Virus record (IMG/VR): IMGVR_UViG_3300027708_000012
Location: 62,001 to 126,000 of that record
Reading direction: 5' to 3' (one strand)
Length of the DNA: 64,000 nt
Both the position numbers and the translations under genes were made by a program. Under the pieces are notes generated by a model that saw nothing but the letters and a program-made list of their open reading frames with translations, had not been told where the DNA came from and did not search any database. This document shows positions 14,176 through 64,000 of this stretch, piece by piece (positions within the stretch are counted from its first letter, which is position 1; each line of letters starts with the position of its first letter).

Positions 14176-14204
14176 TGTAAGCTCCAAAAACTATCAAGTT
14201 ATTA

Positions 14205-39327: not shown

Positions 39328-39765
39328 TTAACCGTTTAATTGTTTGCCTTTAATGTGGGAACCGTGTACCCGAACCTGTATGTGCCCGTTATAATAGTCG
39401 TCAGATTCTAAAACTCTACGACTAAATTGCTCTCTTGCCTCTATGTAACTGCATTCTGATTTGGATTTACAGTAATAAAGTATTTCTCTACGGAAGTTTT
39501 CGGTACCTAACTGCGTAACATCTTTGCTAAGTTCAGGGCTAGAACCATAATATTCTTGCCAGTCGCTATCAATTTTGCTACGGATTTTCTTTTTTTTCTT
39601 TGTGCCGTTCTTTAACTTTAAAGTTTTGTAGGTCGTTTTACTAAATTTTGCTAATTTTTTGCCTATGTACATACGCCCGGTAATTGTATTTGTTATATTA
39701 TAAACAAACCCAACACAATCTTCGGGCAATTCTGTGATTAATTGATTTTCGTAGTACCAAGACAT
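39328..39765 (-). CDS. GIY-YIG endonuclease (stand-alone catalytic domain, DenA/Seg-like)
   Basis: GFVYNITN...GRMYIGKK, YYGSS, F.REIL, E, and YYN motifs; 145 aa. Confidence 0.85.
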   Translation of the reverse strand: MSWYYENQLITELPEDCVGFVYNITNTITGRMYIGKKLAKFSKTTYKTLKLKNGTKKKKKIRSKIDSDWQEYYGSSPELSKDVTQLGTENFRREILYYCKSKSECSYIEAREQFSRRVLESDDYYNGHIQVRVHGSHIKGKQLNG

Positions 39766-39768
39766 ACA

Positions 39769-40047
39769 CTAGTTAGTGTTATCTGGATCCTCCGACTGTG
39801 CCTTTTGATTTTCTTTCTTTGCTGCCTTGTCTTTGTCCAGCCACATTCTATATTGTTGAACATGCCCTCTACGTTCTTTTGCTATAATTCTAATCTGTGC
39901 CAACCAGTAGCGCATGTTTTCGCCTGCTCGTCTTGAGCCTCTTGATTGCCAATTTTGATTTGCCTTGAAATATTCTCTAAAAGCCAGCATGAGTCTTTCA
40001 TGAGATTCCTCATTTTGTTCTGGACTCGGCTCTACATGCTTAGACAT
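39769..40047 (-). CDS. Small basic protein, Hc1/histone-H1-like
   Basis: F..YFKAN.NW..RG.RRAG..MR..LA.I...AKERR..VQ resembles the Hc1-like family. Confidence 0.5.
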   Translation of the reverse strand: MSKHVEPSPEQNEESHERLMLAFREYFKANQNWQSRGSRRAGENMRYWLAQIRIIAKERRGHVQQYRMWLDKDKAAKKENQKAQSEDPDNTN

Positions 40048-44979: not shown

Positions 44980-45279
44980 ATGGCCAAATATTCAAACACT
45001 AGTCCTTGGTATAAGACACCAGTAACTAATAATTATTTAAATATTTTAACTATTCGTCCAGTTAGTGCCGAGACTGATGATTTCTTTTATCACATTGAAG
45101 CACAATATGCATATCGTCCAGATTTATTAGCGTATGACTTATATGGTACATCTAATTTATGGTGGGTATTCATGCAAAGAAATTTAAATGTTATCCAGGA
45201 TCCTATACTAGATTTTGTACCAGGTACTGGCATTTTTATTTGCAAAAAAAATAGTTTAGTAAAGGCATTAGGACTATAA
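44980..45279 (+). CDS. gp53: Baseplate wedge protein (gp53-like, LysM-like)
   Basis: YRPDLLAYDLYG.SNLWWVF..RN motif. Confidence 0.8.
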   Translation: MAKYSNTSPWYKTPVTNNYLNILTIRPVSAETDDFFYHIEAQYAYRPDLLAYDLYGTSNLWWVFMQRNLNVIQDPILDFVPGTGIFICKKNSLVKALGL

Positions 45280-47714: not shown

Positions 47715-47715
47715 T

Positions 47716-49401
47716 ATGGGAAAATCCAACGATCCAGGAATTAGCACAATTGCACAACCGGATCCCAAACCGGGCCCGTTTTTAGCTAAAGTGGTTAGCA
47801 ATGCCGATCCTACCTACATGGGTATTTTAGAAGTACAAATATTAAGACCAACTGGTGGAAGTACTAGTGAAGGACAATTACATCAAGTAAAATATATGAG
47901 TCCTTTCTTTACCGCAACAAATACAAACTATAACGGCGAAGATAACGATTATAATAATACACAAAAGTCAGCGGGATTTTGGATGGCTCCTCCTAATCCT
48001 GGACAGATTGTAATGATATTTTTTATTGACGGAGATCCTAAACAAGGATACTGGATGGGATGTGTTCCTGACGGCGCCGCCAATTTTATGACCCCAGGTA
48101 TAGCAGCAACTGAAAATTGTGTAGAAGGTGGAATAGATACTCCATACGGTCATGCAGATCGTGTTCCAGTTGCAGAATATAATAAAAACGCACCTGAAAA
48201 TAAAACATTAACAGATCCAAACAAGATTAAAAAACCTATTCATCCATTTGCACAAATACTTGCAGATCAAGGATTAATATTAGACGATGTGCGCGGCATA
48301 ACAACTAGTAGTTCTAGAAGAGAATCTCCTAGTATGGTTTTTGGTATCAGTACCCCAGGACCGTTAGATAAGCAATCGGGTTCGCAAACAGGAAATTACG
48401 GTAAACCAGAACATTTAATTAAAAATGGTCCTGTAAGCAGATTAGGCGGATCGTCTTTTATAATGGACGATGGAGATGATAAATTTTTAAGAAAAACATC
48501 TCCTAGTGAAGGTCCGCCTGAATATGCTGCTGTAGAAGAAAAAGAAAAAGACGGTGATGTTACTCGTCCGCATAATGAATTAATCAGACTACGTACCCGA
48601 ACTGGCCATCAAATACTATTGCATAATAGTGAAGATCTCATTTATATCACTAACAGTCGAGGCACAGCATGGATTGAATTAACCAGCGACGGTAAGATTG
48701 ATGTTTATGCTCAAGACAGTATTAGTATACGTACACAAAACGATTTAAATTTTTATGCAGATCGAGATATTAATATTGAAGCTGGTAGAAATTTTAATTT
48801 AAAAGTTGCAGAACGTCATCAAACAGAAGTAGGCATGGATAAAATTTGTATAGTCAACGGCAATGTTGCTATTCAAGTTGACGGAACTCATGACGAAACA
48901 ATTACTGGAGATACAGCAATTAGTATTGCAGGTGCATTAGATATAGATGTTGGCTCAGGTACAAAACTATCATCAGGCGGTGATTTTGATGTCAACACCG
49001 GCGGTGGAAATAAGTTTACATCAGGCGGAGATGCAGATATAAAAGCTGCTAATACTACCATTTCTGGAGGTAACATTAATTTCAACGGGCCTGCGGCAGG
49101 CGCTGCAACAGCTGCGGCATCTGCTACTGCTCCCGAGCCGCTTAGTACCTTTGATAATCCAACAGAAGTCGAAGGCGATACTATTACCAGTATCATGTTA
49201 CGTATTCCTACAACTGAGCCGTACCCTCATCACGAAAATCTAGATCCTACTATGTTTAAGACAGATTTAACAGATAGGGAATCAGGTAGTGCAATAGATC
49301 CACCCGCAGCATGGAAACAATATTCTACTTCAATTGATACGTTTTCTCGTAATATTCCGCTACAAGGTCAAATAGAAGACCAATACTCTGAGACAATATA
49401 A
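47716..49401 (+). CDS. gp5: Baseplate central spike (gp5/VgrG-like; no lysozyme domain evident)
   Basis: OB-fold-like N-terminus (GPFLAKVV...GFWMAPP..G..V...F.DGD...GYWMGC), RTRTGHQILLH, beta-helix repeats. Start moved to the ATG at 47716, just after the upstream stop. Confidence 0.75.
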   Translation: MGKSNDPGISTIAQPDPKPGPFLAKVVSNADPTYMGILEVQILRPTGGSTSEGQLHQVKYMSPFFTATNTNYNGEDNDYNNTQKSAGFWMAPPNPGQIVMIFFIDGDPKQGYWMGCVPDGAANFMTPGIAATENCVEGGIDTPYGHADRVPVAEYNKNAPENKTLTDPNKIKKPIHPFAQILADQGLILDDVRGITTSSSRRESPSMVFGISTPGPLDKQSGSQTGNYGKPEHLIKNGPVSRLGGSSFIMDDGDDKFLRKTSPSEGPPEYAAVEEKEKDGDVTRPHNELIRLRTRTGHQILLHNSEDLIYITNSRGTAWIELTSDGKIDVYAQDSISIRTQNDLNFYADRDINIEAGRNFNLKVAERHQTEVGMDKICIVNGNVAIQVDGTHDETITGDTAISIAGALDIDVGSGTKLSSGGDFDVNTGGGNKFTSGGDADIKAANTTISGGNINFNGPAAGAATAAASATAPEPLSTFDNPTEVEGDTITSIMLRIPTTEPYPHHENLDPTMFKTDLTDRESGSAIDPPAAWKQYSTSIDTFSRNIPLQGQIEDQYSETI

Positions 49402-49403
49402 TT

Positions 49404-49841
49404 ATGGCAAATACTTTATACACTACCAAAGAAGTTCACACTCTTCCAGCTCACCCACCGCCTATAACAAGACGCTATCGTGGATTTAGTACAGTTAGTA
49501 AATCAACTGAAAATTTTTCTTTATTTGATTTTGAATTAATAAAACAAGATTTATTAAATCACTTTTATGTAAGGCAAGGCGAGCGATTAATGAATCCAGC
49601 TTTTGGAACTATAATTTGGGACGTTATATTCGAACCGTTAACTAATGAAATACAAAATCTTATTTTGCAAAATGTAAATGAGATTTTTAGTAGTGACCCT
49701 CGAGTAAGAGCCAAGAGTATAGTTATTACTCCTTACGATACTGGTTTAGAAATACAATGTACATTAGAATATCTGCTTTACAACATACAAGAAAGCATGA
49801 GATTAAAGTTTGATCAGAATAACGGGTTGACGAGACAATAA
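49404..49841 (+). CDS. gp25: Baseplate wedge subunit (gp25-like)
   Basis: YRGFST, LIKQDLLNHF..RQGERLMNP.FGT.IW..IFEP, DPRV. Confidence 0.88.
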   Translation: MANTLYTTKEVHTLPAHPPPITRRYRGFSTVSKSTENFSLFDFELIKQDLLNHFYVRQGERLMNPAFGTIIWDVIFEPLTNEIQNLILQNVNEIFSSDPRVRAKSIVITPYDTGLEIQCTLEYLLYNIQESMRLKFDQNNGLTRQ

Positions 49842-49888: not shown

Positions 49889-52800
49889 ATGAGCTCAACG
49901 GATAGACAGAATAACCTGTTAATTGCTGAAAATTGGCAAAAAATTTATCAATCATTTAAAAATGCGGACTTCCAAAGTTACGACTTTGAGAACTTACGCC
50001 GCACAATGATTGACTATATCCGAACAAATTTTCCTGAAGATTTTAACGATTATATTGAGTCTAGCGAATACCTAGCCCTAATTGACCTTATTGCATTTGT
50101 GGGCCAAAGCATAGCTTTCCGTGTTGACTTAAATGCTCGCGAAAACTTCTTAGAACTAGCAGAACGCAGAGATAGCATACTTCGATTGAGTCGAATGATA
50201 GGCTATAATGCCAGTCGTAATCAAGCAGCAACTGGACTTTTAAAATTTAATACAGTTAGTACTACCGAAGCTATTATTGACAGTAATGGTCGAAATCTTG
50301 CAGGACAAACTATTCAATGGAATGATCCCAGTAACGTTAATTGGTATGATCAATTTATTAAAATAATAAACGCAGCACTTCCACAAAATCATCAGTTTGG
50401 TACTCCTATTGATTCTGCTAAAATTTACGGAATTCCTACAGCACAATACAGATTTAATGCATCTAATAACAACGTTCCGATTTATAATTTTACTAAAACA
50501 GTATCTGGACGTAGTATGAATTTTGAAGTAACTAGTACAACTTTCAAAGGAAAAACATACATTTACGAAGAAGCACCTAAAGTGGGTAATAGTATTGCTT
50601 TTATCTATAGAGATGATGGCTTTGGTGCAACCAGTCCTACAACTGGATTCTTTTTTAATTTTACACAGGGCACATTAAACAATGGTTCCTTCTCAGTAAC
50701 GCATCCTGTTAGCAATCAAACAGTGGATATTGCTACACAAAATATTAACAATACTGATATTTGGGTATACTCTATTGATCAAAACACTGGATTAGAAACC
50801 GAGCTATGGACTCAAGTTCCATCGACTACCGGAAACAATGTTATCTATAATAGTTTAAATTCAAAAATTAAAAACATTTATAGTGTTGTTACTAGAGCAG
50901 GGGATGCAATTACACTTAATTTCAGTGATGGAATTTTTGGAAATTTACCTTTAGGACAATTTAGAATTTATTATAGAGTTAGTAATGCGCTTCACTACTC
51001 AATAAATCCAGCTGATATTGTCAATATTAGCGTAGCTATTCCTTATATTAGTACAAAAAATAAAGTTGAAACACTTACTATTAGTTTAAGTTTACCAACT
51101 AGTGTGTCAAATTCAACTACGGCAGAAACAAATGCTAGCATTAAAACTAATGCACCCCAAACATACTATATGCAAGATCGTATGGTTACAGGTGAAGATT
51201 ATAACATTGGTCCGCTAAGTGCAAATTTATCAGTAGCTAAAGTTAAAGCTATTAATAGAACAAGCAGTGGTATTAGTAGATACTTTGACCTTACTGATCC
51301 TACTGGAAAATATTCTAAAACAAACTTGTTTGCTGACGACGGAGTATTATACCAAGAGATTTATATTTCTGATATAAATTTTTCATATGTTACACAAACT
51401 GATATTCAAGGTGTGATTTATAATACTGTTTACGATTTATTAAATACTCCCGACTTACGAAATTTCTATTATGCAAATTACTTAGATTTTTTAAACGTTA
51501 GTCTTAATATACAATGGAATGCTGTTACTTCTGATAGTAATAGTTCTACTGGTTATATAAGTTTAATTAATAACACTCCGGGAATTTTTCTTTCTCCGCT
51601 TAAAGTTGGAACTTATGCATCAACTGATTTAAAATATCTTACAGTGGGATCTCTAATTAAATTTGTAGCACCAACTGGATTCTATTTTGATACAGCTAAT
51701 AATAATGTTCTTATTTCAGGAACAGCAAATGTTTTAAATTCTTCAACATATGTTTGGGCAGAAGTAGTAAATGTTGTTGATAATGGAACAGCTGGTGGCA
51801 AAGGCATATTACCAACAAATGCTGGACCAATAACATTGAATAAATCAATTCCAACTACTGCCATTGCTACACAGGTAATTCCTCAATTCACTGTTACTAT
51901 TAGTCCCACAGTTGTTACTGGTATGATAGATAAAATATTTGCTAATCTTAATTTTGGTTTACGCTACGATGCAACTACACAAAGTTGGCAATTAATTTCA
52001 GCAGCTAATTTAAACACAGTTGATCAGTTTAGTTTAGGTAATCAGGGTAATACAGATAATTTACAATTAGATTCTAGTTGGTTGTTATTGTTTACCACAG
52101 ACACTGAAAAATATACTATAACAACAAGAAATTTACGTTATATTTTTGAAAGTGATAAAGATGTCACTTTCTATTTTGATACAAATGCAGTTGTTTATGA
52201 TACTGTATCGAGTACAACTGTGTTAGATACAATTAAAGTACTCGGTGTCAATACTAAACCTGACAGTACTAATCCGTTTACATTAGATTTAACATGGGAA
52301 GTCACTTCAGCTTATACTGGAAAAGATGGCTATATTGATCCTAAAAAGATTATATTAACATTTGCAAATTCTAGCGGATCTAATGTAGTGGATAATCCTC
52401 AGCTATTTTTAGATATAGTTGATCCATCAGTTAACCCATTACGTAAGTATGTTGTTGAACAGAGATATTCTATATCATCAGGACAAGAAGATTACAAATA
52501 TGTATTAAATGATCCATATAATGGTCCAGTAAGAATTTTTAACAGTCGAAGTGATCCTAGACTAGGATCGTTACAACAATATGCAGATGGATCGTATTTT
52601 TACTTTGTTGATTCTGCTACAGTGTTTAAGTTAACAGCATCTACAGGAAAATTATCTCCTACTTTAGATTATAAAGTATACGTTGGAAGAGATAGATTGA
52701 AGTTTCAGTATGTTCATAGTGCAGACTACGATAGTAGAATAGATCCAGGTAATAGTAATATCATGGATATCTATATATTAACTACTAGTTACGATACATT

Positions 52801-53380
52801 ATTTAGACAATGGGTAACTAACGGAACAACAGGAGTCAAACCGTTGCCTCCTAGTAGTAGTGAGTTAAACAGTATACTAAGTTCTAATTTAAATTTAATT
52901 AAATCTATAAGTGACGAAATAATATATCATCCAGTAAATTATACATTATTATTTGGATCAAATGCTGATATATCCTTGCAAGCAAATTTTAATGCTATGA
53001 TAAATTCAAATAGTGCTGTATCGAATTCAGACGTACAGGCACGAATATTAAAAGCAATTAATACATTCTTTGCATTAGATAACTGGGATTTTGGAGACAC
53101 ATTTTATTTTACGGAGTTGAGTACATATGTAATGAATCAACTAGCACCTGACTTAATTTCATTTGTAATAGTTCCAGTGCAACCTAATCATTTCTTCGGA
53201 GCATTATTTGAAATACAGTGCTCTACTGATAGTATATTTTTAAGTTGTGCTACAACAGATAATATTATTATTGTAAACGGATTAACTAGCAGCAATTTAA
53301 AAACCATTGGCGCATCACCAACAAATAGTCTTACGACCAACCAAACAGTGACTAGCAATTCAATCGGAGGAACTATTTAA
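49889..53380 (+). CDS. gp6: Baseplate wedge protein (gp6-like)
   Basis: DFENLR..MIDY, FNDYIESSE, ENFLELAERRDSILRL...IGY, FSDGIFG.LP, QDRMVTGEDY; follows gp25. Confidence 0.85.
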   Translation: MSSTDRQNNLLIAENWQKIYQSFKNADFQSYDFENLRRTMIDYIRTNFPEDFNDYIESSEYLALIDLIAFVGQSIAFRVDLNARENFLELAERRDSILRLSRMIGYNASRNQAATGLLKFNTVSTTEAIIDSNGRNLAGQTIQWNDPSNVNWYDQFIKIINAALPQNHQFGTPIDSAKIYGIPTAQYRFNASNNNVPIYNFTKTVSGRSMNFEVTSTTFKGKTYIYEEAPKVGNSIAFIYRDDGFGATSPTTGFFFNFTQGTLNNGSFSVTHPVSNQTVDIATQNINNTDIWVYSIDQNTGLETELWTQVPSTTGNNVIYNSLNSKIKNIYSVVTRAGDAITLNFSDGIFGNLPLGQFRIYYRVSNALHYSINPADIVNISVAIPYISTKNKVETLTISLSLPTSVSNSTTAETNASIKTNAPQTYYMQDRMVTGEDYNIGPLSANLSVAKVKAINRTSSGISRYFDLTDPTGKYSKTNLFADDGVLYQEIYISDINFSYVTQTDIQGVIYNTVYDLLNTPDLRNFYYANYLDFLNVSLNIQWNAVTSDSNSSTGYISLINNTPGIFLSPLKVGTYASTDLKYLTVGSLIKFVAPTGFYFDTANNNVLISGTANVLNSSTYVWAEVVNVVDNGTAGGKGILPTNAGPITLNKSIPTTAIATQVIPQFTVTISPTVVTGMIDKIFANLNFGLRYDATTQSWQLISAANLNTVDQFSLGNQGNTDNLQLDSSWLLLFTTDTEKYTITTRNLRYIFESDKDVTFYFDTNAVVYDTVSSTTVLDTIKVLGVNTKPDSTNPFTLDLTWEVTSAYTGKDGYIDPKKIILTFANSSGSNVVDNPQLFLDIVDPSVNPLRKYVVEQRYSISSGQEDYKYVLNDPYNGPVRIFNSRSDPRLGSLQQYADGSYFYFVDSATVFKLTASTGKLSPTLDYKVYVGRDRLKFQYVHSADYDSRIDPGNSNIMDIYILTTSYDTLFRQWVTNGTTGVKPLPPSSSELNSILSSNLNLIKSISDEIIYHPVNYTLLFGSNADISLQANFNAMINSNSAVSNSDVQARILKAINTFFALDNWDFGDTFYFTELSTYVMNQLAPDLISFVIVPVQPNHFFGALFEIQCSTDSIFLSCATTDNIIIVNGLTSSNLKTIGASPTNSLTTNQTVTSNSIGGTI

Positions 53381-56300
53381 TGGCAACAAATATCAATGGT
53401 AAAAAAGGTCTTAGCGCAAATTTATTGCCAAGTTTTTATCAAACTCCTGCAAACAAGAAATTCTTACAAAGCACTATAGATCAATTATTTCAACCTGGTA
53501 CGCTTACAAAAATTAAAGGTTATATTGGTAGAGAAAATGCAAAAGCAAGTACTGGTAATGATGTTTATCTTAAATCTGCAAATCAGATTAGACAAAACTA
53601 TCAGTTAGAACCGGGACTTGTAATTAAAGATTCATCGGATAATATTGCATTTTTTAAAGACTATATTGATTATATAAATCAAATTAGTATTTTTGGCGGC
53701 AATACTTCTAATCATGCAAGATTAAACAAACAAGAATTTTACAGCTGGGACCCCCATATTGATTGGGATAAATTTGTTAATTTTCAAAATTATTACTGGT
53801 TGCCTTACGGTCCTGACACAATTACAATTTACGGTCCTCAGAATGTTATTAGTACAACATATACTGTTAAGTTACAAACAGAAGGATCCAACAATCAATA
53901 TGTTTTTACACCAGACGGTTCAACTCCTAATCCTGACTTAATACTCTATAGGGGTAAAACATACAAATTTGATATTGACAGTCCTGGCAATCCATTTAGT
54001 TTTAAAACAACTAGAAGTACTGGATCTTTAAATCGCTATCAGCGTTTAAATGCTGTGGACAATTATGCAGTTGAATCTGGAACTATTACAATTTCTATAC
54101 CAGAAGATGCTCCAAGCATTTTATATTATCAAAGCGAAACTGATATAACATCCGGTGGCGTGATTCAAATATTATCAATAGATGAAAATACAAATATTGA
54201 TGTTACTTTAGAAATTCTAGGTAAAAAATCAGTTACATTAAGCGATGGCACTTTATTAAGTAACGGCATGAAAATTGCATTTGGTGGCAACGTACAACCG
54301 GCAAGTTATGCTGTAGATCAATATTATGTTGAAGGTGTTGGTAAATCTATTATACTAGTTCCAGCATCTGTATTAGAAGTTATCAGTCCATGGTCGGTGG
54401 ATGAATCAATACCTTTTGATTCAACTCCTTTTGATAAAGCACCATGGGAAGATGCCACAAGTTATGCTAGCGAAGTAGATTATATAACAATTAATCGCTC
54501 TAGTCGAGATCACAACCCTTGGAGTCGATATAACAGATGGTTCCATAAAGATGTTATTACCGCAAGTGCATTGTACAATAACACTACTGTTGGCTTAGAT
54601 CAAACTCTTCGTGCTGTTCGTCCTATTATTGAATTTGAAGCAGATATTCGATTGTTTAATTTTGGTACAACCGCAATTTTTGACATTGACATCTTTGATG
54701 ATACTACTGGTAATACTGCATTGAATAAACATGCATTGCCTGTTTTTACAGCCATCGAAGGCACAACAAGTTACCAAGCACCTACAGGCAATCCGTCGGT
54801 TTCTATACCATTATCGGATGGTATGCTAGTTTTATTTACAGGCGACCCTGATCCGTTAGTGCAAAATAAAATTTATCGAGTAGAATATATTGATGTAAAA
54901 CATGTTGCACCTACTGATAATTCACCGTCGGGCAGTAAACAACTTCACTTGGTTGAAATTGCATCACCTGAGTTAAATCAAGTAGTGTTAGTTAGACAAG
55001 GAAAATATCAAAGTCAGATGTTTTGGTTTAACGGTAGTTCTTGGATACAAGCACAACAGAAATTAAAAGTAAATCAACCACCGTTATTTGATATTGTTGA
55101 TGATAGTGGAACAAGTTTTGGAGATGAGTCTGTTTACACAGGAACTACATTTAAAGGTTCTAAGATTTTTTCTTATAAAATAGGAACAGGACAAACAGAC
55201 TCTAAATTAGGATTCCCATTAAGTTATCAAAATGTGAATAACATTGGGGATATTGTTTTTAACTTTGACCTTGCAAATGATGCTTTTGAATATAAAAAAG
55301 AATTAGGATTAATATCGCAAAACATAAATGTTGGATACTTGTCTTCTTTAAACTACGGCGGCAATACAATTTATAAAAATGGCTGGCAAACCTGTACTAC
55401 TGAAAATGTTCAAGCAGCTGTTAGAATTTATAAAAATTCCGGATTAACTAAATCTTTTCAGTTAGATATATTTGATAATCATAATAAATTAGAAGATTTA
55501 GTAGTCAAAGTATATGTTAATGGCCATCGACTATCTAGCTCTAATTGGAATTTAGTTAATTCAACTCCTTACAAACGAATTGTTTTAACTACACCTATTA
55601 GTTTAACAGATGTTCTTACTGTAAGAGCATTTTCTTCTCAGCCTATTAATGCTAACGGATACTACGAGGTTCCGCTTAATTTACAAAATAATCCGTTAAA
55701 CGATAATATGCTTAACTTTACACTAGGTGAAGTTATTGATCACGTTGGAACTATTGTAGACAATTTGCCAGGATTTACAGGAGTTTTTCCAGGCAATAGT
55801 ACATTAAGAGATTTAGGAAATATAACTCGTTATGGAACACGATTTGTCCAACATAGCGGCCCACTAAGTCTAGGCATATATCATGTTACATCAGAAACTA
55901 ATAACATTATAAAAGCAATTCAACAATCTCGAGATGATTATAATAATTTTAAACGAGTTTTTATTGATACAGCTAGTAACTTAGGAAAAGATGGCGACCC
56001 TATAACTATAACAAATTTAGTTTTAGAAAAAATAAATGCAAACAAACCAAATACTGCTCCATATTATTTTAGTGATATGGTGCCCTACGGTGCATGCATA
56101 GTTTCTGATCTTTCAGTAGTAGATTATCGAATTAAAAAATACCCTTTAAGCACAGTTTTCACTTTAGACAAATTAAGTAACAAAGCAGTTGGTGTATATT
56201 TAAATGGTACACAATTGATAAATGAACAAGATTATTCGTTTAGTAATCAAAGTTTTGTTATTATTGCTGATCGGGTTAATCTTAAAAATGGCGACACTAT

Positions 56301-58569
56301 TACTACCTACGAGTACGATAGTACCGACGGATGCTTTGTACCAGCAACTCCTACTAAGCTAGGAATGTATCCATCATTTATTCCACAGATTTATACCGAT
56401 ACAACATTAGTTAATCCCCAAACAGTAATTCAAGGACACGATGGCAGTATTGTTTTAGCATACGGCGATTATCGAGATGATTTGTTGCTAGAGTTAGAAA
56501 AAAGAATTTTTAATAACATTAAAGTAAAATACAATACTGATATCTTTGATATATCTGACGTTATTCCTAGTTATAACAGAAATACAGATTATACATTATC
56601 TGAATTTAATCAAGTATTAGCTCCTAATTTTTACAAATGGACTAACTTAATAGGAAAAGATTTAACTACTCCTTTAAATTATGACCGAGCAAATTCATTT
56701 ACGTATAATTACTCGTTAAACTATGCGCCCGATGCTTCTACTAGTCTTCCAGGTTACTGGAGAGGAGTTTATAGATATTTGTTAGATACCGATCGTCCTA
56801 ATATCTGTCCGTGGGAAATGCTTGGATTTACTATCGAACCTAGTTGGTGGCAAGATGTTTACGGACCAGCACCTTATACTAGCAATAATTTACCATTATG
56901 GCAAGATATTGCAAACGGCACAATTCGTATACCAAATCAATCGGCAATGTATTCTAAAAAATATGCAAAGCCTTTTATATTAAATCACATACCGGTTGAT
57001 GATTCTGGAAATCTTATTAGTCCGTTAGATTCGGGAATTGCCGGAGGTTCGTTAAATCCAAACATAGATAATAACTTTGTGTTCGGAGACGGCAGTCCAG
57101 TTGAAACAGCGTGGTCAAGAAGTAGTCACTATCCGTTTAGTGTTTTAATTTCTAGTATTTTATTATTTCCTGCAAAAACGTTCGGAATTTTGTTAGACAG
57201 ATCTCGCATTAAACGAAACCTTGCAGGCCAATTAATATATACCGCAACTGGTTTACGTATAACACCTGCAGATATTATTTTGCCAAGTATATATTCAAGT
57301 AAGTCTAGGGAACAAACAGCTGGACTTATAAATTATTCGGTTGATTTAATATTCAATTATATTTTTAGTAATAATCTTGCAAATTATAATTCTTATCAAT
57401 CTGATTTAAGATCAATGTTACCTCAGTTAAGTTATCGCATGGGTGCGTTTTCTAATCAAGGTCAATTTAATTTGTTATTAGAATCTAAAACACCAACCAG
57501 TTCTGGTAATGTTTTTGTCCCAACCGATGACTATAAGATATTTCTAAATAAATCCAGTAGTATAAAAAAATTAAACTATAGTGGTGTTATTATCACAAAG
57601 CTATCTACAGGTTTTGAAATTAAAGGTTATAGTATAACACAACCTTATTTTAATTATTATAGCCCTAACAATGTTGGAGTTACAATAAATGTAGGTGGTA
57701 TATCTGAAAACTATTCAACATGGACCGCAGGTCAACAATATGCAACCGGTCATGTAGTAAAATCTGATAATGTTTACTATAGAACAACAGTTACACATGT
57801 TTCATCTAACACATTTAATTCAGATTATTTTGTTGCATTGCCTGACTTGCCAATGTCGGGCGGGGTATCGGCCAAATTAAAAAATTCATGGGATCGATCA
57901 TCTGTTAATGTTGCACCGTACGGAACTTTAATTACAAAACTACAAGATGTTGTTGATTTCTTATTAGGATACGGAGAATATTTAAAAGATCAAGGATTCT
58001 TATTTGATGACTTTAATAGAAATCTTTCAGCAGTTGCTAACTGGGAAACTAGTGCAAAAGAATTTATGTTCTGGTCAACTCAAACTTGGAGTACTGAACA
58101 AGATAAATGGAGTGATTGGTCTGCATCGCAACCTTATACATACGGCACAATTGTAAGATACGATGGCGACTACTATAGCGCATTATTCAATATTGCGCCT
58201 GCAACTACTTTTGATTATACAAAATGGTCAATATTACCAGGTTTGAGTAATGTTGGTAGTAGTGTAATTAGTTTAAGTCCTAGCGCAAATGGTATAACTT
58301 TTGTCACTGACTTGGCTGTAGTGGATAGCATTACTAGTAATTTTAATCCTTATGAAATTTTTAAAGTTGACGGAACCCCCTTTGAAATAGCTCATATAGA
58401 TAGTTACCGACAAGAGAACACTGTAACTTATAGTCCTCGTACCACAGATGGAATTTTTGGTGCAAGTTTTTACCTAGTTCAAAACGAACATATTATTGTT
58501 GTAAACAATAAAACAATATTTAACGATATAATTTACAGTCCTGCTAGTGGATATAGACAGGAACGATAG
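53380..58569 (+). CDS. Giant baseplate wedge/structural protein (gp7-like), N-terminal 1729 codons ending at an in-frame TAG
   Basis: Coupled to gp6 by TAATG. Motifs LLP.FYQT..NKKFL, IDWDKFVNF.NYYWLP.GP, PWEMLGF, and CBM-like repeats. Confidence 0.7.
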   Translation: MATNINGKKGLSANLLPSFYQTPANKKFLQSTIDQLFQPGTLTKIKGYIGRENAKASTGNDVYLKSANQIRQNYQLEPGLVIKDSSDNIAFFKDYIDYINQISIFGGNTSNHARLNKQEFYSWDPHIDWDKFVNFQNYYWLPYGPDTITIYGPQNVISTTYTVKLQTEGSNNQYVFTPDGSTPNPDLILYRGKTYKFDIDSPGNPFSFKTTRSTGSLNRYQRLNAVDNYAVESGTITISIPEDAPSILYYQSETDITSGGVIQILSIDENTNIDVTLEILGKKSVTLSDGTLLSNGMKIAFGGNVQPASYAVDQYYVEGVGKSIILVPASVLEVISPWSVDESIPFDSTPFDKAPWEDATSYASEVDYITINRSSRDHNPWSRYNRWFHKDVITASALYNNTTVGLDQTLRAVRPIIEFEADIRLFNFGTTAIFDIDIFDDTTGNTALNKHALPVFTAIEGTTSYQAPTGNPSVSIPLSDGMLVLFTGDPDPLVQNKIYRVEYIDVKHVAPTDNSPSGSKQLHLVEIASPELNQVVLVRQGKYQSQMFWFNGSSWIQAQQKLKVNQPPLFDIVDDSGTSFGDESVYTGTTFKGSKIFSYKIGTGQTDSKLGFPLSYQNVNNIGDIVFNFDLANDAFEYKKELGLISQNINVGYLSSLNYGGNTIYKNGWQTCTTENVQAAVRIYKNSGLTKSFQLDIFDNHNKLEDLVVKVYVNGHRLSSSNWNLVNSTPYKRIVLTTPISLTDVLTVRAFSSQPINANGYYEVPLNLQNNPLNDNMLNFTLGEVIDHVGTIVDNLPGFTGVFPGNSTLRDLGNITRYGTRFVQHSGPLSLGIYHVTSETNNIIKAIQQSRDDYNNFKRVFIDTASNLGKDGDPITITNLVLEKINANKPNTAPYYFSDMVPYGACIVSDLSVVDYRIKKYPLSTVFTLDKLSNKAVGVYLNGTQLINEQDYSFSNQSFVIIADRVNLKNGDTITTYEYDSTDGCFVPATPTKLGMYPSFIPQIYTDTTLVNPQTVIQGHDGSIVLAYGDYRDDLLLELEKRIFNNIKVKYNTDIFDISDVIPSYNRNTDYTLSEFNQVLAPNFYKWTNLIGKDLTTPLNYDRANSFTYNYSLNYAPDASTSLPGYWRGVYRYLLDTDRPNICPWEMLGFTIEPSWWQDVYGPAPYTSNNLPLWQDIANGTIRIPNQSAMYSKKYAKPFILNHIPVDDSGNLISPLDSGIAGGSLNPNIDNNFVFGDGSPVETAWSRSSHYPFSVLISSILLFPAKTFGILLDRSRIKRNLAGQLIYTATGLRITPADIILPSIYSSKSREQTAGLINYSVDLIFNYIFSNNLANYNSYQSDLRSMLPQLSYRMGAFSNQGQFNLLLESKTPTSSGNVFVPTDDYKIFLNKSSSIKKLNYSGVIITKLSTGFEIKGYSITQPYFNYYSPNNVGVTINVGGISENYSTWTAGQQYATGHVVKSDNVYYRTTVTHVSSNTFNSDYFVALPDLPMSGGVSAKLKNSWDRSSVNVAPYGTLITKLQDVVDFLLGYGEYLKDQGFLFDDFNRNLSAVANWETSAKEFMFWSTQTWSTEQDKWSDWSASQPYTYGTIVRYDGDYYSALFNIAPATTFDYTKWSILPGLSNVGSSVISLSPSANGITFVTDLAVVDSITSNFNPYEIFKVDGTPFEIAHIDSYRQENTVTYSPRTTDGIFGASFYLVQNEHIIVVNNKTIFNDIIYSPASGYRQER

Positions 58570-61500
58570 ATCGTTTCCGGATATGTTACTACTGATTGGT
58601 ACGGCGGCCTTGACATACCAGGGTTCATATTTGACTCAGCAGCAATAAAATTATGGGAACCTTATCAAGACTATTCAATTGGTGATATTGTTAACCATCA
58701 AGGATACTATTATAGTGCTCCTAAGCTATTAGGAGGAACTGCAGTATTTTCAGCAAGCGACTGGACCTTATTACCTAAAAAGCCATCAAGCCAGATTTTA
58801 CCAAATTGGACAAACGTTGCAACTCAATTTACAGATTTTTATAATCTTGAAGTTGATAGTTTTAATACTGACCAACAATCGATGGCTCATCATTTGATCG
58901 GCTATCAAAAACGCCAGTATCTTGATAATATTATTCAAGATGATGTAAGCGAATTTAAATTCTATCAAGGAATGATTCGAGAAAAGGGAACACAAAATGT
59001 CCTTAACAAATTATTTGATGTGTTAAGTTCTGATAATCTTGAAAGTTTGGTATTTTATGAAGAGTGGGCGATTCGTGTCGGACAATATGGTGCTGCAAAT
59101 GCATTTGAAAATGTTGAATTTATTTTAAATCAAGAAGATTATAATAGAAATAATCCGCAAGCTACTCTGTTAGTAGAACAATTTAACTCATCGGTTAGTA
59201 CATTTGTTAATCAACAACCAGCTAACTCTGTATACTTAAAACCGTTAGGATATAATTCTAATCCGTTTCCGCTTAAAGAAAGTAACAATTCTTTCTTAAG
59301 AAGTGCCGGACATGTAAATTTGCTAGATGTTAAATTAGGGATACGAGATCTTAGTCAGCTAGTATCTCAGTCGGTTGCTTCGATTAAAACAGGAATTAAC
59401 TATAAAATATTAGTTCCTGGCGCAACTAACTTTACACAAATAGGATCATCTAATAACGATCCTGGTACAATTTTTAATGCTACTTCTGTAGGAACAGGAG
59501 ACGGTACAGTATCGGTTGATGTTACACAGTTTACAGAAGGTGATTACATTTGGTGTTCATTTGATGATACTGTTGTGTCAAACACTTGGAATGTCTACAG
59601 ATTTACCGATATAGGCTTGCGAGTAACTAATGCAACTTATTCTAATAATACTCTTTCTATAACTTGCAAACATCTAGTGAATCTTAAAGTTGGGTCGTAT
59701 GTTGGTATTGTTTTAGAATTACCAAACTCGCAAAAAATAAAAGGGCTTGATGGATTTTTCCAAGTAGCTAGTGTTAGTTTAAATTCGTTTACGGTTTCTG
59801 CTAAAATTGCAGGTTTCCCTGCACACTTTACGCACTTGCAACAACTTGTTATATTTGGTCTATTAACACAACGATCTACCAACATTGATTTAATAGATAA
59901 TATTTTACCAAAAAATCTGCGTCAGGGGGATTTATTATGGACAGACAATGATGCTTCGGGCAAGTGGGCTGTATGGACCTATAAACCGGCATTTTCTAAA
60001 AATACAATCAAACCAAAAACTCGCCCGAGCAATTTAAAATTTGGAAAAACTACTGCGATAAATCAGCTTGGAACTATTTCTGCGGTTGGAACAGCAACAG
60101 GTAGTGTTAGCATATATGATAGAATTAGCAAAGGACTTGGTTGGATAAGTCGACAATACATACAAGCACCGTTTACTGCACATTCTGATGTTAATGAACT
60201 TAGTACACTTGCTACAGTACTAGCAATATCCCCATCGGGCGAATGGTTCTTATCAGGATCTCCAGCCGCTGGAAATATTGCTACAGCTTATGTTGGGGAA
60301 TATGTTTCTTCTAATGCATACAATATTGGAGATATAGTAAAGTATATTGACACTTATTACGAAGCAATAGTATTAACACCTGCTCATCAAACTCCGTCAA
60401 CTAAATCGTTATATTGGAAATCTATACTATACATTCCAGTTAGTAATCAATCAGATAATTCAGAATTATCTACACAAGGTGCTGTATCTTTATACAAAAA
60501 AGATATCAATAATACCTATACATTAGTAGATACTGTTATTAGTCCAATGCCGGCCAATAATGAACAATTTGGCCAATCAATTGTACTTAATGATAATGTA
60601 CTATGGATAAGTGCTCCAGGTGCAAATGATTCTCAAGGCGCAATTTATAAATTTATTAATACTGATACTGTACAGGCAAGCACATTTTATGATGCGGTTG
60701 GAAGTTCTGGTGTAACAATGCATGTAACTAGTACAGCTGGTATATCAGCAGGACAACTTGTTCGAGGAGTTGGATTTGCAAGTGGACAAGCAGTTAAATC
60801 GGTATTATCTAAATTATTTTTTGCTTCTATTCCAGGAGTTCCAAATTATATTCGTGATACACAAAATAATAATGTAAATTTAAATTTTATATCACAAGCA
60901 ACAGTTGTTACCGGTAACGGTATTTTACCAGGCACACAAGTAGTAAAATCAGGAGTAGATATATCTGGAAAATACTATGTGTTAGTTAGTTCAGAAAGAG
61001 ATATCTTACAAACTGTGACAACAGTCACATTTACAAATTCAATAATCTCGGCAGAATTTACAATTGATAATATACAAAGCGATGCAACTATATTATTATC
61101 TAGTAAACCAGATCAAACGCCTGAGGGTAATTTGCAATTCATTGTTACTAATTGGAAATATGATTTAACAGGAACGATTTCTGGCCAACAAGTCAACTCT
61201 AATTTTGGAAGTGTGCTTTCATTTAGTAAAGACGGTTCTACCCTGTTAGTTTCTTCCATAGAAACTAGAATAATTAGCCCTTCAGAAACAATAATGATTG
61301 GTGTAGTCTATGTCTATAAAAATAACGAAAATACTTATAGTTTAATTCAAACACTAGAAGGAACAGACAGTAGTTTTGGTCAAAGTACCTCAATATCAAC
61401 TAATGGAGAATTTATTTCCATTACTGATAGTACATATCCGGATAACGTAAGTCGTCATGGACGAGTTAGTATCTATTCATTGAACACTGAAACTAATCAG

Positions 61501-64000
61501 TATGAAAATCCTCAGTATATTACTGACCACTATTCTGATATAGGTAGTAATTTTGGCAATTTGGCAGCATTTATGAATAACTATGATACATTAGTTGTCT
61601 ATAGCGAAAATGCTGCCGGCCCACAAATAACTTCGTTTGATAGCGGAACAGTAACCTTTGATAAAGCATCAACTAAAATTATTTCATCTATTATTGGTAG
61701 CGGAAGAATTGATGTTTATGACAGATACAATAACAATTGGGTGTTCGGCGAGTCGTTAGCTAATCCTGATGAAAATCTTGATGCGTTTGGAGCAGGATTT
61801 TCTGTAGGCAACAATAGTATATTTGCTGGCGCACCGTTGTTTACCCCAACTGATTCTGACGGAAACTTAATTACTGATTCAGAAAATACCGGAGTATTGT
61901 ATTCTTACACAAAAACTGAAAATGTATATAGTTGGACACGAAAAGATATTCAATCTAAAATAGTTGATGTTGAAAAACTTAAAAAATCTTTTTTATATAA
62001 TAAATCTACAGATCAACTTGTAACTTATCTAGATGTAATAGATCCTATACAAGGTAAAATTGCAGGACCAGCCGATGAAGAATTGAAATATAAAACTTTT
62101 TATGATCCTGCAGTTTATTCGCACAGTGACGGCACAGTATCGGTTACAGTTAGTACACAAACATACTGGTCAAAAAATCAATTAGGTCAACTATGGTGGG
62201 ATTTAAGATCTGCAAAATTCATTGATCCTTATTTTAATAATATTCTTTACAAGTCTAATACTTGGAATAATCTTGCACCCGGCGCAACTATTGATATTTA
62301 CGAATGGATTACTTCTTCGGTGTTGCCCGAGTCATGGGATGCTCAAGCCGATACTCCTGCAGGAATTGCGTTAGGTATTAGCGGTACAAGTTTATATGGT
62401 AATAAAGTTTATAGTGTACGTCAACGATACAATAATATAACTAAAAAATTTACTAATGTTTATTATTTCTGGGTTAAGAATAGACGATTGACGCCGGCTA
62501 TTACAGGCCGCCGTATTTCGGCGCTATCAGTTTCAAATTTGATATCGTCTCCAATTTCTGAAGGATACACATATCTTTCATTGATTGGTGGAGATTCGTT
62601 TGCATTATCAAATTCTTACAAATACCTAGAAGGAAATAATACAGTATTGTCAGTAGAATACTGGACAACTGATAGCATACACAGAAATATCCATAGTCAG
62701 TGGAAATTAATTAGCTCCGATAGTATTGTAGATTTACCTCATACTATTGAGCAAAAATGGATTGACAGTCTTTGCGGATCTGATATTGCCGGAAGAGTTG
62801 TTCCTGATACAGAATTACCTCCTAAACTAAGATACGGTATTGAAAATCGTCCACGTCAAAGTATGTTTGTAAATCGTATTGAAACTTTAAAAGAATTTGT
62901 TGAACTAACTAATATTTCTTTATTAAAGCATCAAATAACTAAGACACGGGATATTAGCAAACTAGAAGAGTATGATATTCATCCTACAGTAATACACGGA
63001 TTGTATGATAGCACTCTGGACACCGAAGCAGAACTATCATATACAAATGCAAATTTATTCCAGAGACCAAGTTTATCTCCAATTATAGTAGACGGTAAAA
63101 TTACTGGAATTATGATTATAAATTCAGGCAAGGGGTATTTAAATCCGCCATACATTCAGATATCTGGATCAGGCGAAGGCGCCATTGTAAGATCGGTAAT
63201 TGATTCTTCTGGTAGAATTATATCAGCAACTGTAGAGTCTTCAGGCTATGGATACGATGATAATACAACTTGCTCTGTAAGGGATTACTGTGTATTAGTT
63301 CTTAGCGATATTTCAGCAAATGGTGTGTGGAGTATATATTCTTACGATCCTACATATATTGATAATACAACAAGATCAGTAGTTGGCATATGGTCCCGAA
63401 CACAGACACAAAGTTACGATGTTAAAAATTATTGGACTTATGCCGACTGGTACGGATCATACACAGATACTTCTGGGAAAGTATTATTCACCGCTAGTCA
63501 GTATACCGCAGCGGATTTTAGTGTTGCAACCTATGCAGATTTAAATTCTATAGCAACAAAAATTGGTCAACTTGTTAAAGTATTAACTGTTAATACTGGT
63601 GGTTGGGAATTATTATACAAGTATGCTGATTCTTCTAGTATTGATTGGACACAAAGCTATAGTTTAGTTGGTATACAAAATGGTACATTGCAATTAAATT
63701 CTAACTTGTACGAAACTAGTTCAACTACTGTAGGCTATGATTCTGGTATATATGATAATACTGGATTTGATATTAAAGCAGCAACTGAATTAAGAAGAAT
63801 TTTAAATACTTTAAAAAATAATATTTTTATTAACGAGTTAAAGAGTTCTTATTTAGAATTATTTTTCAGCAGCATACATTATGCGCATAGTGAACAACTG
63901 TATCTTGATTGGATCTTTAAAACAAGTTTTGTTCGTGCCACACACAATGTAGGAGATCTAGGACAACCTGTTTATTATCCTGTGGATAATTTAAGTAATT
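58570..64000 (+). CDS. In-frame continuation of the gp7-like gene (about 1810 codons, runs off the window)
   Basis: Same frame after the TAG: IVSGYVTTDWYGGLDIPGFIFD...LIGYQKRQYL...FYQGMIREKGT...EEWAIRVGQYG...DPIQGKIAGPA...GQLWWDL...YLDWIFKTSF. I translated the first ~900 nt and spot-checked the rest. It is absent from the ORF track, consistent with no stop before the window end. Confidence 0.85.
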   Translation, partial: MVSGYVTTDWYGGLDIPGFIFDSAAIKLWEPYQDYSIGDIVNHQGYYYSAPKLLGGTAVFSASDWTLLPKKPSSQILPNWTNVATQFTDFYNLEVDSFNTDQQSMAHHLIGYQKRQYLDNIIQDDVSEFKFYQGMIREKGTQNVLNKLFDVLSSDNLESLVFYEEWAIRVGQYGAANAFENVEFILNQEDYNRNNPQATLLVEQFNSSVSTFVNQQPANSVYLKPLGYNSNPFPLKESNNSFLRSAGHVNLLDVKLGIRDLSQLVSQSVASIKTGINYKILVPGATNFTQIGSSNNDPGTIFNATSVGTGDGTVSVDVTQFTEGDYIWCSFDDTVVSNTWNVYRFTDIGLRVTNATYSNNTLSITCKHLVNLKVGSYVGIVLELPNSQKIKGLDGFFQVASVSLNSFTVSAKIAGFPAHFTHLQQLVIFGLLTQRSTNIDLIDNILPKNLRQGDLLWTDNDASGKWAVWTYKPAFSKNTIKPKTRPSNLKFGKTTAINQLGTISAVGTATGSVSIYDRISKGLGWISRQYIQAPFTAHSDVNELSTLATVLAISPSGEWFLSGSPAAGNIATAYVGEYVSSNAYNIGDIVKYIDTYYEAIVLTPAHQTPSTKSLYWKSILYIPVSNQSDNSELSTQGAVSLYKKDINNTYTLVDTVISPMPANNEQFGQSIVLNDNVLWISAPGANDSQGAIYKFINTDTVQASTFYDAVGSSGVTMHVTSTAGISAGQLVRGVGFASGQAVKSVLSKLFFASIPGVPNYIRDTQNNNVNLNFISQATVVTGNGILPGTQVVKSGVDISGKYYVLVSSERDILQTVTTVTFTNSIISAEFTIDNIQSDATILLSSKPDQTPEGNLQFIVTNWKYDLTGTISGQQVNSNFGSVLSFSKDGSTLLVSSIETRIISPSETIMIGVVYVYKNNENTYSLIQTLEGTDSSFGQSTSISTNGEFISITDSTYPDNVSRHGRVSIYSLNTETNQYENPQYITDHYSDIGSNFGNLAAFMNNYDTLVVYSENAAGPQITSFDSGTVTFDKASTKIISSIIGSGRIDVYDRYNNNWVFGESLANPDENLDAFGAGFSVGNNSIFAGAPLFTPTDSDGNLITDSENTGVLYSYTKTENVYSWTRKDIQSKIVDVEKLKKSFLYNKSTDQLVTYLDVIDPIQGKIAGPADEELKYKTFYDPAVYSHSDGTVSVTVSTQTYWSKNQLGQLWWDLRSAKFIDPYFNNILYKSNTWNNLAPGATIDIYEWITSSVLPESWDAQADTPAGIALGISGTSLYGNKVYSVRQRYNNITKKFTNVYYFWVKNRRLTPAITGRRISALSVSNLISSPISEGYTYLSLIGGDSFALSNSYKYLEGNNTVLSVEYWTTDSIHRNIHSQWKLISSDSIVDLPHTIEQKWIDSLCGSDIAGRVVPDTELPPKLRYGIENRPRQSMFVNRIETLKEFVELTNISLLKHQITKTRDISKLEEYDIHPTVIHGLYDSTLDTEAELSYTNANLFQRPSLSPIIVDGKITGIMIINSGKGYLNPPYIQISGSGEGAIVRSVIDSSGRIISATVESSGYGYDDNTTCSVRDYCVLVLSDISANGVWSIYSYDPTYIDNTTRSVVGIWSRTQTQSYDVKNYWTYADWYGSYTDTSGKVLFTASQYTAADFSVATYADLNSIATKIGQLVKVLTVNTGGWELLYKYADSSSIDWTQSYSLVGIQNGTLQLNSNLYETSSTTVGYDSGIYDNTGFDIKAATELRRILNTLKNNIFINELKSSYLELFFSSIHYAHSEQLYLDWIFKTSFVRATHNVGDLGQPVYYPVDNLSN

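What the first reader, a model, noticed from the sequence alone, without database searches (positions are those of the whole stretch)
58555..58620. Single in-frame amber codon splits a >3500-codon baseplate gene
Seen: ...AGA CAG GAA CGA TAG ATC GTT TCC GGA TAT... The frame continues for about 1810 more codons with the same character, including another CBM-like repeat soon after the stop. The first in-frame ATG/GTG/TTG is about 104 codons later (58882) and lacks an SD, so an independent second gene is unlikely. Almost all other genes here end in TAA, three end in TGA, and no other gene contains an internal TAG, so this is not genome-wide code-15 recoding. Inference: (a) programmed or suppressor-tRNA readthrough giving a short and a long wedge protein, (b) a true nonsense mutation in a probably essential gene, or (c) a sequencing/assembly error (for example TTG to TAG).
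Basis: partly seen in the sequence, partly recalled or inferred. Interest (0 to 1): 0.7.

Follow-up and report, generated by a model that had tools for sequence, protein, structure and literature searches.

The report
Amber stop is one assembly's error
The stop codon that seems to split a giant phage baseplate gene exists only in this one metagenome assembly; every other copy of the same phage reads Leu-Lys there, so it is an assembly error or a rare defective variant, not recoding.

Summary
A TAG at window 58567-58569 interrupts one frame, giving 1729 codons, the TAG, then 3247 more codons. The gene has 4977 codons and runs 4.3 kb past the window end.

The TAG is part of a four-base cluster, TAGATC where the population has TTAAAA (Leu-Lys). 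The cluster is private to this one 345,369-bp contig.
- Four other IMG/VR contigs of the same phage, 224 kb compared in all, differ from the window genome at these four bases. One of them has five further single-base differences of its own.
- Logan contigs from seven public runs, including the two samples flagged as possible sources, all read TTAAAA.
- The intact 4977-aa protein is called on 7 JGI contigs. The split products occur on one contig only.
- In 120 of 120 homologues the stop column is I, L, V or M, and the next column is an invariant Lys. The window has Ile there.
- The genome has no CUA-anticodon tRNA and no release-factor gene, and 17 other genes end normally in TAG.

Programmed readthrough, suppression and code 15 are therefore rejected. 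The likeliest cause is a consensus or assembly error. A rare defective haplotype cannot be excluded without raw reads.

The real gene encodes a giant virion protein of PHROG 10938. It lies directly after the gp6-like baseplate wedge gene.

The parts
58567..58572 (+). The discrepant hexamer TAGATC (stop-Ile). All other copies of this phage read TTAAAA (Leu-Lys). The differences are at 58568 (A for T), 58569 (G for A), 58571 (T for A) and 58572 (C for A). It lies inside the near-palindrome CGAT-AG-ATCG at 58564-58573.
53380..58566 (+). Codons 1-1729 of the giant virion/baseplate-module gene (PHROG 10938). The source's gene caller called this part as a separate 1729-aa protein because of the TAG.
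58573..64000 (+). Continuation of the same gene from codon 1732 onward. It runs off the window and ends at TAA at genome 130313, 4313 bases past the window end. Homology to single-ORF relatives continues without a break across 58567-58881.
49889..53380 (+). gp6-like baseplate wedge gene (1163 aa). Its stop codon overlaps the giant gene's ATG by one base.
   Evidence: phrog_10646, E 2.6e-292; synteny with 121Q gp583 and phAPEC6 gp244
49404..49841 (+). gp25-like baseplate wedge gene (145 aa).
   Evidence: PF04965, 30.0 bits against a cut-off of 27.2
47584..49401 (+). gp5-like baseplate hub / tail lysozyme gene. The start is uncertain: another assembly aa.
   Evidence: phrog_13211, E 4.4e-53; Gp5_trimer_C, below cut-off

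Best explanation
The amber codon is not a feature of this phage. It is a private four-base discrepancy (TTAAAA written as TAGATC) in one metagenome contig, most probably a consensus or assembly error. In the natural population the locus is a single uninterrupted 4977-codon gene. It encodes a giant virion protein that follows the gp6-like wedge gene, with Leu1730-Lys1731 at the site. No readthrough, suppression or restart is needed.

Shown: the discrepancy is unique to this contig, and the intact gene is the form found everywhere else. Inferred: the discrepancy arose in sequencing or assembly rather than in a living phage. The confidence given is for that inferred origin. That the natural gene is intact and the TAG is not a recoding signal I hold at about 0.95.
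For: (1) Four IMG/VR contigs from other metagenomes (91.5, 61.1, 44.7 and 32.8 kb; 224 kb compared) match the window genome except at 58568, 58569, 58571 and 58572. One of them has five private single-base differences elsewhere.

(2) Logan contigs of seven runs (X1, X2, X4, X5, X6, X7, X8) read T, A, A, A at those four places at full depth. These include the two samples flagged as possible sources of this DNA. Their near-identical contigs of 750-920 nt differ from the window at those four places only.

(3) No served run was listed as holding the 31-mers that span TAGATC, while 16 runs hold the surrounding 2 kb.

(4) The split products (1729 and 3143 aa) are on record for one contig, the 345,369-bp one. 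The intact 4977-aa protein is on 7 JGI contigs. It equals the window's read-through translation except for L at 1730 in place of the stop and K at 1731 in place of I. ENA strains 91-99% identical also have LK.

(5) In 120 of 120 homologues the stop column is I, L, V or M and the next column is K. The window version therefore damages two conserved positions at once.

(6) Four substitutions within five bases, with no other difference private to the window's contig in at least 91 kb, cannot be ordinary independent point mutations.

(7) The distant homologues 121Q gp582, Vibrio 2.275.O gp424 and SCTP-2 gp140 are single ORFs aligned collinearly across the site.
Against: An assembler writes only k-mers that occur in reads, so some reads, or some systematic read error, must have carried TAGATC. 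I could not see raw reads, because all runs were served as contigs, which drop rare variants. It is not certain that S1 or S2 is the true source library. No specific error mechanism was demonstrated. The new hexamer AGATCG equals the first six bases of the Illumina adapter, but that is from my memory and is only a lead. The change also lengthens a local inverted repeat, which would equally fit a real template-switch mutation.
Confidence: 0.62

Rival explanations
1. It is a real but rare defective haplotype. A single complex mutation, for example a template switch at the quasi-palindrome GGAACGAT..ATCGTTTCC, produced TAGATC in a minority of genomes in one sample. These genomes persisted briefly, perhaps complemented by co-infecting wild type, and the assembler happened to thread that path.
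For: The contig must reflect k-mers present in the reads. The change strengthens the local DNA hairpin, from -0.9 to -3.7 kcal/mol. Another JGI assembly (sample 3300010885) has the same gene in three in-frame pieces, with stops at W3511 and Q4601. Nonsense-bearing versions of this 15-kb gene therefore turn up more than once.
Against: Only two of the four changes (58571, 58572) are predicted by copying the opposite arm of the palindrome; 58568 and 58569 are not. The variant is absent from Logan contigs of the two likely source samples at 18x and 43x word depth, and no run was listed for its k-mers. It removes 3247 conserved codons of a virion protein and an invariant Lys, so it should be lethal when alone.
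Confidence: 0.3
2. It is programmed stop-codon readthrough or suppressor-tRNA decoding, giving a 1729-aa and a 4977-aa form of the protein.
For: The long conserved frame continues after the TAG, and no start or SD lies near it.
Against: The stop is absent from every other copy and from 120 of 120 homologues. The following codon replaces an invariant Lys. None of the 29 phage tRNAs has a CUA anticodon, and there is no release-factor gene. TAG is an ordinary terminator of 17 other genes.
Confidence: 0.02
3. These are two separate genes: translation ends at the TAG and a second protein starts at the ATG at 58882. A variant of this reading is genome-wide TAG reassignment (code 15).
For: The source's gene caller produced exactly these two products.
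Against: The 104 codons between the TAG and 58882 are among the best conserved of the family. No SD precedes 58882. All relatives have one ORF. Against code 15, the 17 other TAG terminators are followed by further stops within 0-29 codons. The one 146-codon exception is a full-length separate gene.
Confidence: 0.01

Closest known systems
Giant virion protein of Asteriusvirus/RaK2-like jumbo phages: Escherichia phage 121Q gp582 and phAPEC6 gp245 (PHROG 10938)
   Same: It is the gene directly after the gp6-like baseplate wedge gene, in the order lysozyme/hub, gp25, gp6. The profile match is collinear over both halves (E 4e-205 and 2e-109), and BLASTP segments cross the stop site. phAPEC6 gp245 (381.9 kDa) was detected in virions by mass spectrometry (PMC7247149).
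   Different: Identity is only about 26%. This protein has 4977 aa against 3323 aa. It comes from a freshwater metagenome phage whose close relatives all have roughly 4700-5700-aa versions. The function of the family has not been tested.
Programmed stop-codon readthrough in phage structural genes (e.g. Qbeta A1 protein; from my own knowledge)
   Same: There is an in-frame stop followed by a long coding extension.
   Different: In true cases the stop is conserved and both products are functional. Here the stop is private to one contig and sits in a conserved motif.
TAG-to-Gln reassignment (code 15) in crAss-like and Lak phages (from my own knowledge)
   Same: There is an in-frame TAG in a late structural gene.
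   Different: There is a single TAG only, TAG is used as a terminator elsewhere, and the genome has no suppressor tRNA.
Laboratory amber mutants of T4 baseplate genes (from my own knowledge)
   Same: A nonsense codon lies in an essential tail gene. If the variant is real it would behave as a conditional-lethal mutant.
   Different: There is no evidence that such a genome replicates in nature, and the change is four bases, not one.

Membership tests
Programmed readthrough / suppressor-tRNA recoding site | The stop codon is conserved at the site in close relatives | tested here: not met
   Four near-identical contigs and seven runs read TTA. In 120 of 120 homologues the column is I, L, V or M.
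Programmed readthrough / suppressor-tRNA recoding site | A cognate suppressor tRNA (anticodon CUA) is available from the phage | tested here: not met
   ARAGORN finds 29 tRNAs and a tmRNA in the 345-kb genome, none with a CUA anticodon. A host suppressor cannot be tested.
Programmed readthrough / suppressor-tRNA recoding site | Both the short and the long product are made | not testable with these tools
   This needs virion proteomics of an isolate.
Genetic code 15 (TAG reassigned) | TAG is not used as a terminator, and many genes carry in-frame TAG | tested here: not met
   17 other genes end in TAG, with 0-29 open codons downstream and one separate-gene exception.
PHROG 10938 giant virion structural protein (121Q gp582 family) | A significant collinear match to the family profile | tested here: met
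   E 4.3e-205 (residues 708-1570 to profile 546-1331) and E 2e-109 (part 2 to profile 1464-2140); BLASTP.
PHROG 10938 giant virion structural protein (121Q gp582 family) | Position directly downstream of the gp6-like wedge gene in the baseplate module | tested here: met
PHROG 10938 giant virion structural protein (121Q gp582 family) | Incorporation into the virion | not testable with these tools
   This is known only for the homologue phAPEC6 gp245, by mass spectrometry (PMC7247149).
T4 gp7-type baseplate wedge protein | Sequence or fold similarity to gp7 | tested here: inconclusive
   No PDB sequence hit for residues 1-1729 or for an N-terminal profile. The AF2 N-terminal model (pLDDT 62) matches only cupredoxin-like beta-sandwiches at TM 0.19. 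Only the gene position is gp7-like.
CBM_5_12 carbohydrate-binding module | A Pfam match above the gathering score | tested here: met
   Residues 1580-1602 score 27.1 bits against a cut-off of 26.2. The copy 29-49 residues after the stop scores 22.7 bits, below the cut-off.
Diversity-generating retroelement target (considered because 3 of the 4 changes are at A) | A reverse transcriptase in the genome and adenine-specific changes over a variable-region tract | tested here: not met
   There is no RVT_1 match in the genome. One change is T to A, and the neighbouring adenines are unchanged.

The most novel reading that the evidence does not exclude
The TAGATC version is a real minority haplotype made in one step by template switching at a quasi-palindrome. 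Together with the two other in-frame stops seen in the same gene in another assembly, this would mean that natural blooms of this freshwater jumbo phage carry defective 'cheater' genomes. Their 15-kb baseplate gene is knocked out, and they survive by complementation during co-infection.
Probability: 0.12. Interest if true: 0.4.

Novelty: not a real feature. Interest (0 to 1): 0.08.

Why it matters
The result removes a false lead. An apparent recoding or readthrough site in a giant phage gene is a defect of one deposited contig. Anyone annotating this 345-kb phage should merge the two called proteins (1729 and 3143 aa) into one 4977-aa protein with Leu-Lys at the junction. It also shows that comparing a contig with sister assemblies and run contigs can settle such cases quickly. 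The gene itself is one of the largest phage proteins. It belongs to an abundant and uncharacterised family, with more than 2000 relatives of about 5000 aa in metagenomes. That is of moderate interest, independent of the stop codon.

Tried and rejected
- AF2 model of residues 1555-1905 around the stop. Mean pLDDT was 50.6, and residues 140-198 of the model, which include the stop site, were below 50. It says nothing about the local fold, so no fold search was run on it.
- AF2 model of residues 1-420 with Foldseek against PDB. Only cupredoxin-like beta-sandwich matches at TM about 0.19, and no baseplate protein.
- PDB sequence searches. Nothing relevant.
- DGR mutagenesis as the source of the cluster. 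The genome has no reverse transcriptase, and the pattern does not fit.
- An ectopic donor for CGATAGATCG elsewhere in the genome, by gene conversion or repeat mis-threading. None was found on either strand.
- GATC avoidance, or adapter runs in the genome. GATC occurs at 1.03 times expectation, and no adapter 10-mer is present.
- Illumina adapter origin of AGATCG. This is a lead from memory only, and I found no way to test it without reads.
- blastn against GenBank phages gave no DNA match. Only protein-level relatives at about 26% identity were found.
- The second same-frame TAG pair in the window, 39769..40047 and 39328..39765 (-). The downstream ORF matches its PHROG over the full length and the TAG is present in the other assemblies, so these are two ordinary genes.

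Full report
**What is in the window.** The window is bases 62001-126000 of a single 345,369-bp contig. The genome has 38% G+C, 29 tRNA genes and a tmRNA, and it comes from freshwater metagenomes. At window 58567-58569 a TAG stands in the frame of an ORF that begins at 53380. Read with X at the stop, the frame runs for 1729 codons, then X, then 3247 codons. It ends at TAA at genome 130313, 4313 bases beyond the window end. The first possible start after the TAG is the ATG at 58882, and nothing like an SD precedes it.

**Is TAG reassigned or suppressed in this genome?** It is not.
- A simple gene set for the whole genome ends in TAA 232 times, TGA 76 times and TAG 18 times.
- After the 17 other TAG terminators the frame closes again within 0-29 codons.
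- The one exception is window 39769..40047 (-), with 146 open codons downstream. An ORF with its own ATG follows, and that ORF matches its PHROG over the full length. The TAG is present in the other assemblies as well, so these are two ordinary genes.
- None of the 29 tRNAs has a CUA anticodon, and the genome has no release-factor domain.

**What do relatives have at the site?**
- Distant relatives are single ORFs of 3323-3807 aa that follow a gp6-like wedge gene: Escherichia phage 121Q gp582, Vibrio phage 2.275.O gp424 and Salicola phage SCTP-2 gp140.
- BLASTP segments and the PHROG 10938 profile run collinearly across the stop.
- The stop lies in one of the best conserved motifs of the family. 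Its column is L, L and I in these three proteins.
- A search of the large protein collection gave 2297 relatives, most of about 4700-5700 aa.
- Among the best 120, the stop column is I (78), L (33), V (8) or M (1). The next column is K in all 120, whereas the window has Ile (ATC) there.
- The top hit, P0003, is an uninterrupted 4977-aa protein. It is identical to the window's read-through translation except for L at 1730 in place of the stop and K at 1731 in place of I.

**Is the TAG present in other copies of the same phage?** It is not.
- A pattern scan with the five central bases left free found four IMG/VR contigs from other metagenomes (taxon ids 3300028392, 3300010158, 3300027749, 3300009151). 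All four read TAAAA, giving TTA AAA.
- The window's own public contig, Ga0209188_1000003, reads AGATC.
- I compared those contigs almost in full, 224 kb in all. G001 alone covers 91.5 kb and nearly the whole window.
- All four differ from the window genome at exactly 58568, 58569, 58571 and 58572. G001 has five private single-base differences elsewhere, and the other three contigs have none.
- The split products of 1729 and 3143 aa are on record for one contig only, the 345,369-bp one. The intact protein is on seven JGI contigs.
- ENA strains 91-99% identical also have Leu-Lys.

**What do the sequencing runs show?**
- Sixteen public runs hold the surrounding 2 kb. The best hold 0.94-0.98 of the sampled words, never all of them.
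- Logan's contigs of X1, X2, X4, X5, X6, X7 and X8 all read T, A, A, A at the four positions, at full depth. S1 and S2 are flagged as possible sources of this DNA.
- The near-identical contigs of 750-920 nt differ from the window at those four positions and nowhere else. X3 had no contig over the site.
- A search with a 61-base stretch in which every 31-mer spans the variant listed no run. That is four sampled words, so the result is 'none was listed', not 'none exists'.
- All runs were served as contigs, which drop rare variants. A minority of TAGATC reads therefore cannot be excluded.

**Interpretation.**
- The dominant, and as far as can be seen the only, natural form of the gene is intact.
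- The window genome shows no other private difference from its sister contigs in at least 91 kb. Four substitutions within five bases cannot then be independent point mutations. This is one event.
- The change also replaces an invariant Lys, so even a read-through product would be damaged. That argues strongly against any selected recoding device.
- The most probable origin is an error introduced during sequencing or assembly of that one data set (about 0.6).
- The alternative is a real, rare and probably non-viable haplotype that the assembler threaded (about 0.3).
- Two leads bear on the origin, and neither is decisive. First, the change lengthens an inverted repeat (GGAACGAT / ATCGTT(T)CC) and stabilises the local DNA hairpin from -0.9 to -3.7 kcal/mol. 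That is what template-switch events do, but copying the opposite arm explains only 58571 and 58572, not 58568 and 58569. Second, the new hexamer AGATCG equals the first six bases of the common Illumina adapter. That is from my memory and was not tested, and no longer adapter stretch is present.
- No donor sequence for the variant exists elsewhere in the genome. There is no reverse transcriptase that could support DGR-type mutagenesis.

**What the gene is.**
- The upstream genes on the same strand are a gp5-like hub/lysozyme (phrog_13211, E 4e-53), a gp25-like wedge protein (PF04965, above the cut-off) and a gp6-like wedge protein of 1163 aa (phrog_10646, E 3e-292). The stop codon of the gp6-like gene overlaps the giant gene's ATG by one base.
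- The giant protein belongs to PHROG 10938, annotated 'virion structural protein'.
- Its homologue phAPEC6 gp245 (381.9 kDa) lies in the same position after gp244 'baseplate wedge'. It was found in purified virions with 17 unique peptides (PMC7247149).
- The protein therefore sits where T4 has gp7, but I could not show homology to gp7. There was no PDB sequence hit. A mediocre AF2 model of the N-terminus matched only generic cupredoxin-like sandwiches.
- It contains CBM_5_12-like repeats on both sides of the site, one above and one below Pfam's cut-off. It also has a borderline T7 tail-fibre N-terminal match near residue 4340.
- 'Giant baseplate-module virion protein' is a fair description. 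'Wedge protein' remains an inference from gene order.

**Verdict.** Readthrough, suppression, code 15 and a two-gene reading are rejected. Interest is low. The practical outcome is a corrected annotation: one 4977-aa protein with Leu-Lys at 1730-1731.

Noticed in passing
Same gene in another assembly (JGI sample 3300010885, contig of 32,803 nt); equivalent to genome 125910, 127677 and 129180, i.e. window 63910 and two positions beyond the window end: This assembly has the gene called as three in-frame pieces of 3510, 1066 and 365 aa. That implies stops at W3511 (TGG) and Q4601 (CAA), plus S4100Y, with the protein otherwise identical. The IMG/VR contig of the same length from sample 3300009151 is intact. 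No DNA was available for this sample, so error and real variant cannot be told apart. Two nonsense changes among three protein-level changes is odd either way.
   Followed up: partly
Genome 283032-283475 (-) and 261025-275644 (-), outside the window: The phage genome carries a tmRNA gene (tag peptide ending ...ANDAEFALAA). It also has 28 tRNA genes in a 14.6-kb stretch, plus one tRNA-Met at 5282.
   Followed up: no
window 6358-14187 (-) and 14224-19905 (-): Two adjacent very large paralogous tail-fibre-like genes of 2609 and 1893 aa. Both match phrog_9851 at about E 1e-145 to 1e-151.
   Followed up: partly
window 39328-40047 (-): A 92-aa ORF ends in TAG and is followed two codons later, in the same frame, by the ATG of a 145-aa ORF. 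The 145-aa ORF matches phrog_447, labelled 'NAD synthetase', and related families labelled 'homing endonuclease'. The DNA is identical in the other assemblies that cover it, so this is an ordinary gene boundary and not a second split gene.
   Followed up: yes
window 45279-47714 and 47584-49401 (+): The 811-aa ORF and the longest form of the gp5-like ORF overlap by 131 bases. Another assembly's gene call gives the gp5-like protein 561 aa rather than 605 aa, so the true start is probably further downstream.
   Followed up: no
window 58900-59030: Run contigs pile up here to very high word depth (up to 447 in X6) with many variants and joints. This conserved stretch of the giant gene (motif ...QDDVSEFKFYQGMIREKGTQN...) is evidently shared by many related phages in these lakes. 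It is also where Logan contigs break.
   Followed up: no
Whole family: More than 2000 relatives of this protein, mostly 4700-5700 aa, occur in JGI, ENA and Logan metagenome assemblies. This is a large, essentially unstudied clade of freshwater and environmental jumbo phages, only about 26% identical to the cultured RaK2/121Q group.
   Followed up: partly
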